A stretch of 64,000 bases of DNA from positions 248,001 to 312,000 of the IMG/VR virus record IMGVR_UViG_3300023184_000025; one strand, 5' to 3'. Positions 39,271 to 42,808 of this stretch are shown here, one piece after another (the stretch's first letter is position 1; every line of letters begins with the position of its first letter). A program made the translations under genes and the position numbers. Below the pieces are notes generated by a model. The model was not told the DNA's origin, did no database searches, and saw only the letters and a program-made list of their open reading frames with translations.

Positions 39271-39825
39271 TTAGAAACTACGTGTGTAGAATACATTGTA
39301 ACCATCTTGACGTGAATCACCGGTGATTCGGTCGAAACGGAAACCAACTGCATCCTTCTTGTTGATTGCATAAGTTACGCCAACACGAACTGTATCGGTG
39401 GTGTCTTTGTTTACATTGGCATTGTCTGCCGCTGTACGATAACGGTAAGCAACCTTAGCTGTCAAGCCAGAGCTCAATGGTACAGTAACACCTGGCTCAA
39501 TTGAGTAGTATGTAAACTGACCGCTGGTGCTGTACTTTTGGCCCAATGCCACTTTAGCGTAGCCTTTAACTGGTCCAAACAATGTAGTAGTTGCAGTACC
39601 GCCAACTTCTAAACGTGTGCTAACTGAATTTGTGTTGTCAGTTTGCGTTGATGAAAGTTGTGTGTGTACACCAAATGTATCATTGATACTTTCACTTAGA
39701 GCGAAGTTGGTACTCATTTGGTCATTGCCACCGATGGTGTTTAATTTTGTGCCTTCTACAGTAACTGATCCGGCAAACGCTGTGCTACTAATTGCAATAG
39801 CAATAAATGCTAAGATTTTCTTCAT
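39271..39825 (-). CDS. Outer-membrane beta-barrel protein
   Basis: Sec signal MKKILAF..AFA, alternating strands, C-terminal YTRSF BAM signal. Confidence 0.8.
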   Translation of the reverse strand: MKKILAFIAIAISSTAFAGSVTVEGTKLNTIGGNDQMSTNFALSESINDTFGVHTQLSSTQTDNTNSVSTRLEVGGTATTTLFGPVKGYAKVALGQKYSTSGQFTYYSIEPGVTVPLSSGLTAKVAYRYRTAADNANVNKDTTDTVRVGVTYAINKKDAVGFRFDRITGDSRQDGYNVFYTRSF

Positions 39826-39922
39826 TTTTATTTTCCTTAAAAAAAGAATGAGTTTTAAATCATTCACTATTATGTATCAGTGTTTGCAACAATGTTAATT
39901 AAAATTGGGGGTATTTTGGTCC

Positions 39923-39947
39923 AAAAAAAACCCGCCGAAGCGGGTTC
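39923..39947 (-). terminator. Intrinsic terminator ending the tmRNA
   Basis: aacccgc-ttcg-gcgggtt + U-tract. Confidence 0.9.
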
Positions 39948-39949
39948 TG

Positions 39950-40222
39950 AGTTTCTGTTACGAGGTATGTCTTACCCTAGACGGCTTTTATCAAGCTGCC
40001 AATGCGAACTGTTCGTCGTTTGCGTTTACGTTTTTTGCTTGATTTACGGTCATCGCCTACCGTGCTGTCCACTCTGTTACTCTTTGCCCTGTCAAAACCA
40101 TGCTCACCCCCGACAAGAATATACTAACCTAGTATACTCTTGGTGGAAGTGCCGGGGCTCGAACCCGGGTCCAAGACAACTTTCTCTTCGCCTCTTCCCT
40201 TTCGGGGTTTACAGCAATATTC
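39950..40222 (-). ncRNA. ssrA: tmRNA, circularly permuted (two-piece); tag ANDEQFALAA
   Basis: T-arm/acceptor ..GGGTTCGAGCCCCGGCACTTCCACCA (ends 40141) precedes 5' GGGGGTG (40111); G3:U70 pair; tag ORF 40023-39991. Confidence 0.93.
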
Positions 40223-40855
40223 TTATTTAATCAATCTACGCTTTTGTAAATTCAATTCTGCTATTTTAGCATCGTCTGGCTTTAGATAGTAATTCTTCTC
40301 ACCATCGTTATACCAGTGTCTACCAAACGCATTGTTGTTTTTATTCTTGCGTAGTTGAGTCCATTCAATTGTTGTTATCCAACCTTCTGGAATTTGTTCT
40401 TTATTATACTTTTTGCGTGATGACAAGTCAACCGCATCTTTACCCACACACCAAACTTTTCCAAACTGCGAATTGTTTTCTTTCTGTTGGTGTTGCTTTT
40501 CAGCAAAGGTCTTCTTACGCTTTTCCATTGCTGAGTCAGTGTTTGCCAAATCACACACCTTCTTTTGATGTTCTTTGTTTACAGAAAAATTGTGTTCAGT
40601 GCGAATACCTGTAAATGGATTTGGGTGTAGTTGATGACGCAACTTTCCCGCTTCTCGTTGTCTTATTCTTACTAATTCTTCTTTTGGGCTTAACTTTGCT
40701 AAACCCTGCCACGCAACATAATCTTGCCAACGACCATATTCTTCATATAACTTGCGATGTGCTTCTGCGTGGTCATCAACAGATAATTCTACAAGATTGC
40801 TTGGATCGTCTGTTCCGCCTGCGTGTTTAGGAATAATATGATGTTTGTGGCTCAT
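40223..40855 (-). CDS. HNH homing endonuclease
   Basis: HHIIPKHAGGTDDPSNLVELSVDDHAEAH; C-terminal repeat modules; TATAAATA upstream. Confidence 0.85.
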   Translation of the reverse strand: MSHKHHIIPKHAGGTDDPSNLVELSVDDHAEAHRKLYEEYGRWQDYVAWQGLAKLSPKEELVRIRQREAGKLRHQLHPNPFTGIRTEHNFSVNKEHQKKVCDLANTDSAMEKRKKTFAEKQHQQKENNSQFGKVWCVGKDAVDLSSRKKYNKEQIPEGWITTIEWTQLRKNKNNNAFGRHWYNDGEKNYYLKPDDAKIAELNLQKRRLIK

Positions 40856-40894
40856 ACAAGTATTTATACCTGTCGAACCAAAGTCCAGGATTAG

Positions 40895-41206
40895 TTAAAT
40901 ATTTCCTAATCCTACACGACTATAACCCAACTTGGATTTAATCTCTTTACGGTCTCGATTCTTCTCTGGTTTCCACGCCCGTGGGTCGACGGTTTCACCA
41001 GTTAGTTCATAACGAAAGTCTGGATCGTAAACCATATATCCCAGTTTGTTCCATTTGATTACCCCATCGTCAAATAGAAAAATACAACCACGACACATAC
41101 AGAAACTGGCACCGTTTTCACTCATTACATTACCATTCACCGTGCCAACATATTTGACCACATTACCCTGGTGCATTTCTTTAAGTGCTTCGTAGTAGTC
41201 AATCAT
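40895..41206 (-). CDS. Hypothetical protein
   Basis: Coupled ORF. Confidence 0.6.
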   Translation of the reverse strand: MIDYYEALKEMHQGNVVKYVGTVNGNVMSENGASFCMCRGCIFLFDDGVIKWNKLGYMVYDPDFRYELTGETVDPRAWKPEKNRDRKEIKSKLGYSRVGLGNI

Positions 41207-41433
41207 TCATCAACTCCAAAAACAAACTTGATACGATTGGCAACCACCTTGCCATCATATCGGGTGTCGTTAGCAACATCTAAACATTCATTGATGATTA
41301 GTTCTGCGAATTTTTCTAAACGGATCTTATCCCATTCTTGAATTTTGAATCCATCTTTGGGATCAAATTGGTATATCTTATCAGCAGATAAGTTAGCCTG
41401 TTCAGTAAGTTGTTTTATCTTCTGTTCGTTCAT
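41203..41433 (-). CDS. Hypothetical phage protein (EKFAELIINEC family)
   Basis: MNE.IK.L..QA..EKFAELI..EC pattern. Confidence 0.7.
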   Translation of the reverse strand: MNEQKIKQLTEQANLSADKIYQFDPKDGFKIQEWDKIRLEKFAELIINECLDVANDTRYDGKVVANRIKFVFGVDE

Positions 41434-41459
41434 AGTGGTCTTTGCGGTGTCCTACCCTT

Positions 41460-41502
41460 GCGTCCAGAACACTTTTCTCTTTGCTTCATACAGCAATAAC
41501 TC
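41460..41502 (-). pseudogene. Remnant of a second tmRNA acceptor-piece 5' segment
   Basis: gtcca..tttctctt..acagcaata..ctta aligns with 40169-40225 but breaks at the T-arm. Confidence 0.6.
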
Positions 41503-42147
41503 TTACTTATTGATTATACTGTCAACAAAGTCTAATAGCAATGCATAATGGCTACCTTGATGATATTTGCCCTTCATCCAACTGTAACTATCATACCAAT
41601 GCCGTTCACTTTCAGGATGACACCCTATTAATCCAATTTGGTTTTGAATTATGGCCATTGGATCACCATTGGCATAACGAGCAACAGTTTCGAACTTAGA
41701 CTCGTCTCCAACTAAAGCGCACCCGTCATACCAAAACATGTTTGTGGGAGTGCCGTTCCAGGTTATACTGATATTTTTTGCATGCGGCCTGCGAGTATCA
41801 GTGTCAGGGCGTGTTATATACTGTACTGCATCAACGCCGTCTAGCAAATTAAAATACTCACTGCCAGCCCAGTATGCACCCATACAGATACCAAGGTATG
41901 CTCCACCACGATTAACAAATTCCTGTATCCTAAGTCCGTTTTCTCTAGTTAAAAAATTAAAATTACTGGCATCTCCCAGACCACCGGGAAAACATATCAT
42001 GTCAACATCGTCAAAAAAATCCGCCTCTAATTCCTGGCGGGTGAATATTTTAAATGTGTAGTTTGACGAAAGGGCTTTAATGATACCGTTGCCACTTTGC
42101 ACGGAGCAATATGGTTGGTGCAAAAATAATGCAATGCGACCGTTCAT
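41503..42147 (-). CDS. Class I glutamine amidotransferase-like protein (BPL_N-like)
   Basis: FPGG, YLGICMGAY, HPE. Confidence 0.85.
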   Translation of the reverse strand: MNGRIALFLHQPYCSVQSGNGIIKALSSNYTFKIFTRQELEADFFDDVDMICFPGGLGDASNFNFLTRENGLRIQEFVNRGGAYLGICMGAYWAGSEYFNLLDGVDAVQYITRPDTDTRRPHAKNISITWNGTPTNMFWYDGCALVGDESKFETVARYANGDPMAIIQNQIGLIGCHPESERHWYDSYSWMKGKYHQGSHYALLLDFVDSIINK

Positions 42148-42149
42148 GA

Positions 42150-42281
42150 TTATTTGTGTGGTTTTAAAAAGTCATCGTCTTTTGAATCTTCATCAAATTT
42201 GGACCAATCGTAGGTAGCAACTGAATATATCCAATATCCATACAGTCCAAAAATTAAAATTAATAAAATTAGATTAGACAT
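42150..42281 (-). CDS. 43-aa single-TM protein (not in ORF track)
   Basis: MSNLILLILIFGLYGYWIYSVATYDWSKF.. Confidence 0.55.
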   Translation of the reverse strand: MSNLILLILIFGLYGYWIYSVATYDWSKFDEDSKDDDFLKPHK

Positions 42282-42295
42282 ACTACTCGAGATAT

Positions 42296-42808
42296 TTAGT
42301 CAACAGTTTTATTGACTGTTACCCCGGACTTTTCTAAAAATTTTACCCCTGAATCATCTCGGTATGCTTCTCCGTAAAATACTCTGCGTATTCCGGATTG
42401 ATAAATCAGTTTAGCGCATTCAATGCAGGGAGCATGAGTAACAAACAAATCAGCACCGTCGCCACTTTCTGTGCTCTTGGCCAATTTTGCAATGGCGTTA
42501 GTTTCAGCATGAAGTACCTCTGGTTTAGTTTTTAATCCGTATCTATACTCTTCTTCAGCATCTTCGTTATATTCTGTATACGGATACATCGATTCAAACT
42601 CATCGGGACTAATCCATCCTCCTGCTCCAGAGTCATATACTTTATCTTCGCAATTATTATCCCAACCAGCCGGCATACCATTGTAGCCAATTGAGATGAT
42701 TCTATCATCCTTGACCACAATAGCACCCACATGCAATCTACGAGCATGACTAAGTTTGGCAAATGTTTTAGCAACATCCATATAGGCCTGAATAAATTTC
42801 TGTTTCAT
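42296..42808 (-). CDS. dCMP deaminase
   Basis: GYNG, HAETNAI, PCIEC. Confidence 0.95.
   Translation of the reverse strand: MKQKFIQAYMDVAKTFAKLSHARRLHVGAIVVKDDRIISIGYNGMPAGWDNNCEDKVYDSGAGGWISPDEFESMYPYTEYNEDAEEEYRYGLKTKPEVLHAETNAIAKLAKSTESGDGADLFVTHAPCIECAKLIYQSGIRRVFYGEAYRDDSGVKFLEKSGVTVNKTVD

What the first reader, a model, noticed from the sequence alone, without database searches (positions are those of the whole stretch)
40169..41502. Fossil of tmRNA replacement: broken tmRNA pieces flank an HNH-linked insertion
Seen: 41460-41502 is a diverged copy of the first ~45 nt of the acceptor piece and stops at the T-arm (..CTGGACGC). Two small ORFs follow, then GGACTTTGGTTCGACAGG (~40868-40886), which resembles the tmRNA 5' D-loop segment, fused to a TATAAATA box. 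Next come the HNH gene and the intact tmRNA. Both acceptor copies start right after an upstream stop codon. Inference: a free-standing homing endonuclease targets tmRNA and delivers a resistant replacement allele.
Basis: partly seen in the sequence, partly recalled or inferred. Interest (0 to 1): 0.6.

Follow-up and report, generated by a model that had tools for sequence, protein, structure and literature searches.

The report
Homing endonuclease scars beside phage tmRNA
A selfish nuclease gene in a giant freshwater phage sits inside what used to be the phage's own tmRNA gene, with two dead fragments of the old gene upstream and a hybrid working copy downstream, a pattern that recurs in more than a dozen related phage contigs.

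Summary
Window 41497-41462 (minus strand) is a 36-nt copy of the 5' part of a two-piece tmRNA acceptor piece. It is the only significant partial acceptor match in the 345-kb genome. It is not the diverged copy: it is letter-perfect for the canonical allele carried by at least 76 other phage contigs, and the window's working acceptor (40218-40141) is the variant.

In orthologous loci, complete acceptor copies cut in the T-loop abut the same HNH promoter.

An HNH-less relative (L127, 342 kb) has an intact canonical tmRNA at the homologous place. There it follows the dCMP deaminase gene, not the BPL_N-like gene. Against L127, 1420 nt of the window (cargo ORFs, HNH, new acceptor, 5' half of the coding piece) replace 215 nt. 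The crossover lies inside the tmRNA, at 40041-40000.

Truncated acceptor copies occur in 18 of 29 HNH loci and in 0 of 43 HNH-free loci.

Best reading: a free-standing homing endonuclease with a linked tmRNA allele entered by gene conversion. Cleavage and resistance of the linked allele are untested. This is a new variant of intronless homing.

The parts
41528..42298 (-). Separate insertion relative to the HNH-less relative L127: a 43-aa ORF (42281-42150) and the BPL_N/GATase-like gene (42147-41503). GTTGAC lies at both junctions.
   Evidence: blastn to L127 stops at 42299 and resumes at 41527. Pfam BPL_N E 1.2e-11. Junction sequences.
41498..41527 (-). Conserved 5' flank of the resident tmRNA gene. 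It holds a sigma-70-like -10 box, TATAAT, at 41518-41513, and overlaps the last codons of the BPL_N-like ORF.
   Evidence: 98.5% identity over 41527-41461 to L127 3455-3520. Promoter-like match 10/12, but the number of such matches in the region is not above chance.
41462..41497 (-). Fossil 1, 5' part: 36 nt identical to the canonical 5' part of the acceptor piece (ATTGCTGTA...TTCTGGAC).
   Evidence: Acceptor profile positions 1-39, E 2.6e-6 genome-wide. The same 26-mer is followed by an intact T-arm and CCACCA in 73 loci by the automatic call and 3 more by eye, out of 80. Shuffle tests.
41435..41461 (-). Fossil 1, remainder: degenerate T-arm and 3' end (GCAAGGGTAGGACACCGCAAAGACCAC). The TTCGA loop is destroyed. 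The same junction occurs in L083, L084, L088, L089 and L095.
   Evidence: 23 of 5000 shuffles reach the alignment score to canonical T-arm and 3' ends. Junction listing.
41203..41433 (-). Cargo ORF of 76 aa, member of a multi-copy small-protein family with the motif EKFAELIV(R/K)EC.
   Evidence: ORF list. Paralogues in cassettes of L083, L106 and L112. No Pfam or PHROG hit.
40895..41206 (-). Cargo ORF of 103 aa, function unknown. It is 87-94% identical in the cassettes of L083, L087 and L110-L112.
   Evidence: Very deep in metagenome contigs compared with the HNH gene. Weak Atlas lead to Tad2-like at 0.82, a lead only.
40872..40888 (-). Fossil 2: CTGGAC + TTTGG + TTCGAC, the end of the P2 strand plus the 5' T-stem and T-loop of an acceptor piece, cut within the T-loop.
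   Evidence: Same distance from the HNH start codon as the T-arm of complete acceptor copies (profile 1-45 to 1-48) in L085, L086 and L089; L087 has a 1-50 copy about 40 nt upstream of its start codon. An X5 contig joins 41461 to 40879 with 2 nt between. Weak by profile alone.
40856..40871 (-). Conserved 5' flank of the HNH ORF (AGGTATAAATACTTGT), promoter-like. It travels with the HNH gene.
   Evidence: Conserved upstream of the forward-type HNH ORFs of L083-L086, L088, L089 and L095; L087 has a different flank. GGTTCGAC...TAAATA occurs once in the 345-kb genome and TATAAATAC once in the window.
40223..40855 (-). Free-standing HNH homing endonuclease gene, 210 aa. Residues 1-55 are the HNH catalytic domain. 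Residues 63-191 are shared with Seg-like GIY-YIG enzymes that also sit upstream of tmRNA genes.
   Evidence: Single copy in the genome. Absent from the genome that holds L127.
40141..40218 (-). Working acceptor piece, a variant allele. It has a 14-nt hairpin insertion and TCTTGGAC in place of TTCTGGAC. The T-arm is CCGGG/TTCGAGC/CCCGG and the piece ends in CCA.
   Evidence: Profile positions 1-65, E 9.5e-16. Rfam alignment. Alignment with L084, L116 and L127.
40112..40140 (-). Intervening segment between the acceptor piece and the coding piece.
   Evidence: Rfam alignment. Sequence.
39923..40111 (-). Coding piece: 5' acceptor strand GGGGGTG (G3:U pair), PK1, tag ORF 40023-39988 (ANDEQFALAA), terminator hairpin. 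The recombination breakpoint lies between 40041 and 40000.
   Evidence: At informative columns the window matches L084 151 times in a row, then L127 in 27 of 35.

Best explanation
The locus is the footprint of a free-standing HNH homing endonuclease cassette that lives at the 5' side of phage-encoded two-piece tmRNA genes.

Shown:
- The backbone of this jumbo phage is that of the HNH-less relative L127: dCMP deaminase, canonical tmRNA, OMP-like gene.
- In the window, the stretch from just after the acceptor's 5' part to the middle of the coding piece has been exchanged. The incoming segment carries a ruined old acceptor (fossil 1), two cargo ORFs, a T-loop-truncated acceptor relic (fossil 2), the HNH gene, a variant acceptor piece and the 5' half of the coding piece.
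- The left crossover lies in or just before the invariant 36-nt 5' part. The right crossover lies inside the tmRNA at 40041-40000. The working tmRNA is therefore a chimera.

Inferred:
- The HNH enzyme cuts canonical tmRNA genes of co-infecting relatives in or near the T-loop of the acceptor piece.
- Recombinational repair copies the cassette and the adjoining tmRNA sequence (co-conversion).
- The truncated acceptor copy upstream of the HNH gene gives the cassette a left homology arm inside the target gene, so it can move between genomes whose neighbouring genes differ.
- The linked variant allele (TCTTGGAC, altered 5' part) escapes cutting while keeping the P2 pairing through G-U pairs.
For: 1. 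Empty site. L127 and L167 show the same gene order at 78-91% aa identity, with a canonical tmRNA and no HNH. Window 41527-41461 is 98.5% identical to L127, and homology resumes at 40040.
2. Chimera. The window is L084-like at 151 consecutive informative columns and then L127-like at 27 of 35.
3. Recurrence. The fossil-HNH-tmRNA order recurs in both HNH orientations. Fossils end at profile position 45-50, within the T-loop, directly at the HNH promoter (L085, L086, L089; in L087 about 40 nt upstream of the start codon) or at the HNH stop codon (L098, L101, L105, L106, L109-L112).
4. Association. Fossils occur in 18 of 29 HNH loci against 0 of 43 HNH-free loci chosen by the tag sequence alone (Fisher p 8e-10).
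5. The working allele next to an endonuclease gene is canonical at TTCTGGAC in 1 of 17 cases, against 30 of 43 without one (p 6e-6).
6. L116, which has no adjacent HNH, differs from the window allele almost only in the first 48 nt.
7. Turnover. L179 keeps a fossil and only the last 11 HNH codons in front of a canonical tmRNA. An X5 metagenome contig shows a form without the cargo ORFs.
8. Seg-like GIY-YIG genes that share the HNH enzyme's C-terminal region sit at the same side of tmRNA genes.
9. Precedent. T4/T6 SegB cuts tRNA genes and prefers the motif RAWTSGAAC. By my reading this motif is the reverse complement of T-loop DNA. SegB drives homing and segmental amplification (PMC2330249, PMC13096335).
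Against: - No cleavage data exist. The cut site and the resistance of the linked allele are inferences.
- The loci are not phylogenetically independent, so the Fisher values overstate the support.
- L100 and L179 have canonical 5' parts next to an HNH gene or HNH remnant, so the TTCTGGAC idea cannot be the whole story.
- Fossil 2's T-stem (TTTGG) does not match any working allele seen. It is shared by all close HNH relatives, so it was inherited with the cassette rather than made in this genome.
- The type-39 junction of fossil 1 is shared with loci of other contexts. Fossil 1 may therefore have come in with the donor segment rather than being the resident gene's remains.
- Plain homologous recombination between co-infecting phages, without any cut, would give the same chimera.
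Confidence: 0.68

Rival explanations
1. Passenger model. The region is a hyperplastic hot spot where ordinary homologous and microhomology-mediated recombination shuffles modules. The tmRNA fragments are by-products of such exchanges, and the HNH gene is one more cargo gene that neither cuts nor targets the tmRNA gene.
For: The flanks are highly mosaic. The 80 BPL_N loci show many different downstream neighbours. BPL_N itself is an insertion with GTTGAC at both junctions. The cargo between fossil 1 and fossil 2 differs in every locus.
Against: Truncated acceptor copies are found only where an endonuclease gene is present (18/29 against 0/43). They end at the same place in the T-loop and abut the HNH gene in both orientations. 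Two further endonuclease architectures (reverse-type HNH, GIY-YIG) occupy the same side of the gene.
Confidence: 0.15
2. Amplification-and-collapse model. The endonuclease cuts T-loop-like DNA in its own genome. Recombinational repair makes tandem duplications of the tmRNA-HNH segment, as SegB does with tRNA-Tyr. Later deletions leave partial copies. The fossils are then remnants of duplication in cis, not of invasion from another genome.
For: SegB-dependent tandem repeats with microhomology junctions are documented (PMC13096335). All copies in the window are direct repeats. The breakpoints lie in the T-loop.
Against: The working allele and the fossils are different alleles, not decayed copies of one. 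The window's tmRNA is a chimera of two lineages, with an HNH-less relative as the backbone. That requires exchange between genomes.
Confidence: 0.1
3. Functional-element model. The 36-nt 5' part with its promoter is kept because it still does something. It could be a leader or promoter for the cargo ORFs, an RNA that pairs with the coding piece, or a boundary repeat for cassette shuffling like the promoter-stem-loop elements of T4-type phages (own knowledge).
For: The 5' part has 0-2 mismatches in most fossils, while the neighbouring HNH genes are only about 66-80% identical in DNA. It keeps the upstream promoter-like flank. Contigs from an RNA library (X15) cover the cargo ORFs (this may be DNA carry-over).
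Against: The working canonical allele is itself almost invariant across more than 70 contigs, so recent capture explains the identity. The T-arm and acceptor 3' strand are ruined. No covariation or transcript ends are available. This model is compatible with the main explanation rather than opposed to it.
Confidence: 0.07

Closest known systems
Free-standing homing endonucleases of T4-type phages (intronless homing; SegB in the tRNA gene cluster, HNH-type MobE): PMC2330249, PMC2790892, PMC2988022, PMC13096335
   Same: An endonuclease gene between genes, present or absent among relatives. It lies next to a conserved target gene, and flanking markers are co-converted, giving chimeric alleles. 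SegB cuts tRNA genes and prefers a motif that, by my reading, equals T-loop DNA. The HNH N-domain here is related to T4-type and cyanophage homing endonucleases.
   Different: The target gene is a phage-encoded two-piece tmRNA. The cassette is flanked upstream by truncated copies of the target, so both homology arms can lie within one small RNA gene. HNH and GIY-YIG enzymes share a C-terminal module at this site. tmRNA is not mentioned in the SegB work.
Group I introns, some with LAGLIDADG endonuclease genes, in the T-loop of tmRNA genes (PMC11915505)
   Same: The same gene and the same small region. The main intron site lies between loop nucleotides 6 and 7. The fossils here end after loop nucleotides 5-7.
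   Different: There is no ribozyme (no Rfam intron hit). No 3' exon follows the insert; a complete second acceptor does. The endonuclease family is HNH or GIY-YIG, not LAGLIDADG. The gene form is permuted and phage-borne.
Genomic islands integrated into tmRNA genes by tyrosine integrases (Islander, PMC4383910)
   Same: The insertion splits the gene. The element carries sequence that restores a working gene. A displaced fragment marks the boundary.
   Different: No integrase is present. The displaced fragment is the 5' part lying upstream, not the 3' part at the far end. The restored part is a divergent allele, not an attachment-site copy. The host is a lytic-type jumbo phage.
Mobile endonuclease ORF that brings a replacement gene end and leaves the old end as a pseudogene
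   Same: The endonuclease-linked element carries its own copy of the gene part it displaces. The old part remains as a fossil.
   Different: That case concerns the 3' end of a protein gene in a mitochondrion. This one concerns the 5' part of a structured RNA gene in a phage.

Membership tests
Permuted two-piece tmRNA gene (for 40218-39923) | Covariance-model score above the curated threshold | tested here: met
   RF01850 scores 120.4 bits (threshold 84) and RF04321 111.8 bits (threshold 47). ARAGORN calls a permuted tmRNA.
Permuted two-piece tmRNA gene (for 40218-39923) | Acceptor piece with T-arm and CCA placed before the coding piece; acceptor stem with a G3:U pair; tag ORF ending in ALAA | tested here: met
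   CCGGG/TTCGAGC/CCCGG, then CACTTCCACCA pairing with GGGGGTG. Tag ANDEQFALAA followed by two stop codons.
Permuted two-piece tmRNA gene (for fossil 1, 41497-41435) | Intact T-arm and an acceptor 3' strand able to pair with a coding piece | tested here: not met
   The profile match ends at position 39. The loop reads TAGGAC, not TTCGA. No Rfam hit even at E 10.
HNH homing endonuclease, free-standing | HNH catalytic motif | tested here: met
   PF01844 scores 24.7 bits (cut-off 21.4). PHROG 655 E 3.4e-11. The motif aligns with the group II intron maturase HNH of 6me0.
HNH homing endonuclease, free-standing | Presence/absence polymorphism at one site among related genomes | tested here: met
   The window and L082 carry it. 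The syntenic L127 genome (95% complete) lacks any homologue. L179 keeps only an 11-codon remnant.
HNH homing endonuclease, free-standing | Co-conversion of flanking target sequence | tested here: met
   Chimeric tmRNA with the breakpoint at 40041-40000.
HNH homing endonuclease, free-standing | Site-specific cutting of the endonuclease-less allele and immunity of the own allele | not testable with these tools
   Only an allele association is available.
Group I intron in the tmRNA T-loop | Ribozyme core, and the 3' exon continuing directly after the insert | tested here: not met
   No intron family among the Rfam matches up to E 10 in 39800-41700. The insert is followed by a complete acceptor copy whose 3' T-stem is not complementary to the fossil's 5' T-stem.
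Integrase-borne island in a tmRNA gene | A tyrosine integrase gene and a displaced 3' fragment at the far end | tested here: not met
   The ORFs between the copies are the HNH gene and two small unknown ORFs. The displaced fragments are 5' parts lying upstream.
SegB-type segmental amplification | Tandem, near-identical repeat units that contain the endonuclease gene and the RNA gene | tested here: not met
   Only partial acceptor copies of different alleles are present. The HNH gene is single-copy.
Transposon with target-site duplication | Short exact direct repeats and a transposase | tested here: not met
   The repeats are 17-63 nt and belong to different alleles. No transposase domain was found.

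The most novel reading that the evidence does not exclude
Truncated acceptor copies are more than scars. Together with the tmRNA gene they may form a portable landing pad, with both homology arms inside one conserved 300-nt RNA gene. Endonuclease cassettes and their changing cargo ORFs could then home between jumbo phages that share no synteny around the tmRNA. At least three endonuclease architectures, built by domain swapping, exploit this pad: HNH with C-domain A, HNH with C-domain B, and GIY-YIG with C-domain A. The result would be an arms race written into the acceptor's P2/T-arm junction.
Probability: 0.3. Interest if true: 0.75.

Novelty: new variant of a known kind. Interest (0 to 1): 0.6.

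Why it matters
- It would add a new target class to phage homing endonucleases: a phage-borne two-piece tmRNA gene.
- It shows how a selfish nuclease can invade a structured RNA gene without an intron. It is linked to a working replacement allele, and the old 5' part stays behind as an upstream arm.
- It explains orphan tmRNA fragments that confuse annotation of large aquatic phages.
- It gives natural allele series for mapping which acceptor nucleotides tolerate change.
- It points to enzymes that may recognise T-loop DNA.
- It offers a natural system, with many variants in public metagenomes, for studying the invasion, decay and loss of endonuclease genes.

Tried and rejected
- Near-identity and protein searches of the GenBank phage collection with the locus and with BPL_N found nothing.
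- The 80 BPL_N-related loci were examined for a tmRNA directly downstream.
- Group I intron: no Rfam hit.
- T4-type late promoter. TATAAATAC occurs once in the 64-kb window, no more than chance. GGTTCGAC...TAAATA occurs once in the genome. It is a cassette-specific flank, not a general promoter motif.
- D-loop reading of 40888-40872: the coding-piece profile gives E 4.9 and the acceptor profile E 0.65. The reading is not excluded, but it is less supported than the T-arm reading.
- Cyanophage homologues of the HNH N-domain (S-SKS1, RB11-B) have no RNA gene annotated within 2.5 kb; tmRNA was not searched for there.
- Host tmRNA as the source or target. The canonical 23-mer occurs in only one 887-bp MAG contig among 185,579 species genomes.
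- Function of the two cargo ORFs: no Pfam or PHROG hit even at E 10. The only lead is a weak Atlas match to Tad2-like.
- Papers: four searches found no report of a free-standing endonuclease at a phage tmRNA gene.
Full report
**Setting.** The window is bases 248001-312000 of a 345-kb IMG/VR virus record that CheckV rates 99% complete. It is a jumbo phage with 28 tRNA genes and one tmRNA gene in the window. Everything discussed lies on the minus strand. In reading order the features are:
- dCMP deaminase, 42808-42296
- a 43-aa ORF, 42281-42150
- a BPL_N/GATase-like gene, 42147-41503
- the first tmRNA-like piece
- ORFs of 76 aa and 103 aa
- the second tmRNA-like piece
- an HNH gene, 40855-40223
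- the tmRNA gene, 40218-39923
- an outer-membrane-barrel-like gene

**The intact gene.** ARAGORN calls a permuted tmRNA with the tag ANDEQFALAA. Rfam gives 120 bits for the beta-type model and 112 bits for the permuted model. The acceptor piece is 40218-40141. Its T-arm is CCGGG/TTCGAGC/CCCGG, and its CACTTCC-ACCA end pairs with GGGGGTG at the start of the coding piece (40111), giving a G3:U pair. The tag ORF is 40023-39988, and a terminator hairpin ends at 39923.

**Checking piece 1.** The stretch 41525-41434 aligns colinearly with the 3' end of the HNH ORF plus the acceptor piece. Under four scoring schemes, no shuffle of 3000 and no random 92-mer of 2980 from the same genome reaches the observed score. 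I built a 65-position profile from 25 intact acceptor pieces of related phages. It matches 41497-41460 at positions 1-39. Against the whole genome, both strands, the E-value is 2.6e-6. It is the only partial hit there besides the T-arms of tRNA genes. So the piece is real.

The next 27 nt (41461-41435) still align to a canonical T-arm and 3' end. Only 23 of 5000 shuffles do as well. The TTCGA loop, however, reads TAGGAC, and the 3' strand cannot pair with a coding piece. Piece 1 is best described as a whole acceptor piece with a ruined 3' half.

**Which copy is the odd one.** In the 80 loci returned, the 26-mer is followed by an intact, covarying T-arm and CCACCA in 73 by my automatic call and in 3 more by eye. 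The fossil therefore carries the canonical, almost invariant allele. The window's working acceptor is the variant: it has a 14-nt hairpin insertion and GTTGTCTTGGAC in place of GTGTTCTGGAC. The canonical sequence is phage-specific. Among one genome each of 185,579 prokaryote species it occurs in only one 887-bp MAG contig.

**Checking piece 2.** CTGGACTTTGGTTCGAC (40888-40872) lies directly in front of AGGTATAAATACTTGT and the HNH start codon. On its own it is weak. The acceptor profile gives E 0.65 at positions 15-48, and a profile of coding-piece 5' ends gives E 4.9. The decisive evidence is orthology. In front of the orthologous HNH genes of L085, L086 and L089, at the same distance from the start codon, a complete 5' part runs without a break into GGAC, a 5-nt stem and the T-loop, and then stops (profile positions 1-45 to 1-48). 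L087 has a 1-50 copy about 40 nt upstream of its start codon. A contig of metagenome run X5 joins window 41461 to 40879 with two letters between. That reads as the 5' part, GGAC, GGGGG and TTCGAC directly on the window-type HNH promoter. Piece 2 is therefore the T-stem and T-loop of an acceptor piece, not the D-loop segment of the coding piece. The 11 nt GGTTCGACAGG also resemble the coding-piece start, so a hybrid junction cannot be excluded.

**The HNH gene.**
- Pfam HNH scores above its cut-off, and PHROG 655 'homing endonuclease' gives E 3e-11.
- The N-terminal 71 residues are 62% identical to an annotated homing endonuclease of cyanophage S-SKS1. More distant matches lie in T4-type phages.
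- It is the only copy in the genome.
- Residues 63-191 are homologous (E 1e-11) to the C-terminal half of a Seg-like GIY-YIG enzyme that sits directly upstream of a tmRNA acceptor in L284. Similar GIY-YIG genes precede the tmRNA in L253 and L309.
- A second HNH type, found in reverse orientation, shares only residues 1-55.

The enzymes at this site are therefore modular.

**The empty site.** L127 (a 342-kb contig, 95% complete) and L167 have the gene order Metallophos, dCMP deaminase, tmRNA, OMP-like gene, orf79, DUF4214. Amino-acid identity to the window is 78-91%. The L127 genome has no homologue of the HNH gene. By blastn:
- window 42900-42299 matches L127 at 86-90%;
- 41527-41461 matches at 98.5%;
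- 40040-39200 matches at 85%.

Two things follow. First, the 43-aa ORF and the BPL_N-like gene are a separate insertion between the deaminase stop codon and the tmRNA flank, with GTTGAC at both junctions. This explains why none of the 80 BPL_N-related loci has a tmRNA downstream. Second, window 41460-40041 (1420 nt) stands where L127 has 215 nt.

**The chimera.** I aligned the tmRNA genes of the window, L084 and L083 (HNH 94-95% identical), L116 (no adjacent HNH) and L127. At columns where L084 and L127 differ, the window agrees with L084 151 times in a row, from the acceptor start to 40041. From 40000 on it agrees with L127 in 27 of 35 columns (gap columns are counted, so the run length is inflated, but the switch is plain to the eye). 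The right crossover thus lies within the tag region of the tmRNA. L116 has the same T-arm, intervening segment and coding 5' half as the window but the canonical 5' part. The HNH-linked allele therefore differs from a free allele almost only in its first 48 nt.

**Recurrence.** Thirty-three IMG/VR loci encode relatives of the HNH gene. In most of those with enough flanking sequence, a tmRNA gene lies within about 100 nt. The architecture is always fossil, HNH in either orientation, sometimes cargo ORFs, then an intact tmRNA. Fossils fall into two classes:
- One class ends within the T-loop (profile positions 45-50). These lie at or just upstream of the HNH promoter in forward loci and directly abut the HNH stop codon in reverse loci.
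- The other class has the GGACGC|AAGGGTAG junction of the window's piece 1. It is shared by L083, L084, L088, L089 and L095, and each has different cargo behind it.

As a control I drew loci by the tag sequence alone. Of the 45 loci with at least 1.2 kb of sequence upstream (or an endonuclease gene within 1.5 kb of the acceptor), 43 have neither an endonuclease homologue nor a fossil.
- Fossils: 18 of 29 HNH loci against 0 of 43 (Fisher p 8e-10).
- Canonical junction 8-mer TTCTGGAC: 1 of 17 endonuclease-adjacent working alleles against 30 of 43 free ones (p 6e-6).

These loci are related to one another, so the p-values are upper bounds on the real support. TCTTGGAC keeps the P2 pairing with AGGG through G-U pairs. 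That is the kind of change expected of an immunity substitution, but this is inference.

**Turnover.** L179 has a T-loop-truncated fossil, a methionine-aminopeptidase-like ORF, only the last 11 codons of the HNH gene, and then a canonical L127-like tmRNA. Metagenome contigs show three further forms: one without the cargo ORFs, much deeper canonical forms, and a form with the HNH promoter region joined to the orf76 start on opposite strands. Contigs from an RNA library (X15) cover parts of the HNH gene and the cargo ORFs. DNA carry-over cannot be excluded, so I do not claim transcription.

**Mechanism.** The exchange, the chimera, the empty site and the association are shown. What follows is inferred. 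The enzyme cuts canonical tmRNA DNA near the T-loop. Repair copies the cassette and part of the donor's tmRNA gene. The upstream fossil, which carries the invariant 36 nt of the target, serves as the left homology arm. This would explain how the cassette moves among genomes with unrelated neighbours. The fossil 5' parts are nearly perfect although the HNH genes are only about 66-80% identical in DNA, and the same reasoning could explain that too.

SegB of T4 and T6 is the closest precedent. It lies among tRNA genes and cuts them. Its preferred motif is RAWTSGAAC, which by my reading is the reverse complement of T-loop DNA. It drives both homing and recombination-dependent duplication with microhomology junctions (PMC2330249; PMC13096335). 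tmRNA is not mentioned in that work. Group I introns, a few of them with LAGLIDADG genes, occupy the tmRNA T-loop, mainly between loop nucleotides 6 and 7 (PMC11915505). The fossils here end after loop nucleotides 5-7, but no ribozyme is present. Two-piece tmRNA genes in aquatic phages are known (PMC9004378).

**Verdict.** The finding is real, and its main inference holds at the comparative level. The details need correcting: which copy is diverged, what piece 2 is, and what the relatives look like. It is a new variant of intronless homing rather than a new kind of system. I found no report of free-standing endonucleases at phage tmRNA genes, nor of target-derived upstream fossils of this sort.

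Noticed in passing
window 41528-42298: Relative to the syntenic relative L127, the 43-aa ORF and the BPL_N/GATase-like gene are an insertion between the dCMP deaminase stop codon and the tmRNA flank. GTTGAC lies at both junctions. BPL_N homologues sit in many different contexts in other phages.
   Followed up: partly
L127 3560-3685; also L143, L150, L151, L153, L154, L158, L178, L188, L191, L197: Many canonical phage two-piece tmRNA genes have a ribosome-binding site and an ATG right after the acceptor's CCA. Small ORFs therefore lie inside the intervening segment. In L127 a 41-aa hydrophobic ORF runs into the start of the coding piece.
   Followed up: no
L284 11169-11927; L253, L309: Seg-like GIY-YIG endonuclease genes lie directly upstream of tmRNA acceptors. 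Their C-terminal half is homologous to residues 63-191 of the window's HNH protein. In L309, and seemingly in L253, the fossil upstream includes the 5' end of an old coding piece; in L309 an old acceptor 3' end and intervening segment precede it.
   Followed up: partly
L179 3679-4640 (oriented with the tmRNA forward): A T-loop-truncated acceptor fossil is followed by a methionine-aminopeptidase-like ORF, then only the last 11 codons of the HNH gene, then a canonical tmRNA. This looks like an endonuclease gene that has been lost.
   Followed up: partly
L003 3420-3495, L004, L005, L006, L007, L083 5546-5620, L112 325-400: ARAGORN reports tRNA genes with a CUA anticodon (amber-suppressor-like, labelled Pyl) near the tmRNA or BPL_N-like gene in several relatives. 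The window has 28 tRNA genes but none of this kind.
   Followed up: no
window 41203-41433 and cassettes of L083, L106, L110-L112: The 76-aa ORF belongs to a family of small proteins with the motif EKFAELIV(R/K)EC. The family occurs in several paralogous copies per cassette.
   Followed up: no
window 40895-41206: The 103-aa cargo ORF is far deeper in lake metagenome contigs than the HNH gene (summed contig depths of about 400-770 against 15 in run X4). It is therefore widespread among co-occurring phages. The only functional lead is a weak Atlas match to a Tad2-like family.
   Followed up: partly
L094, L101, L109, L110-L112 (between the reverse-type HNH gene and the next gene): Reverse-type cassettes carry two inverted copies of GGTTTCGAC. 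One lies just upstream of the HNH start codon and one in the spacer of a TTGACA/TATAAT promoter that faces the other way. This could be an operator or a target relic.
   Followed up: no
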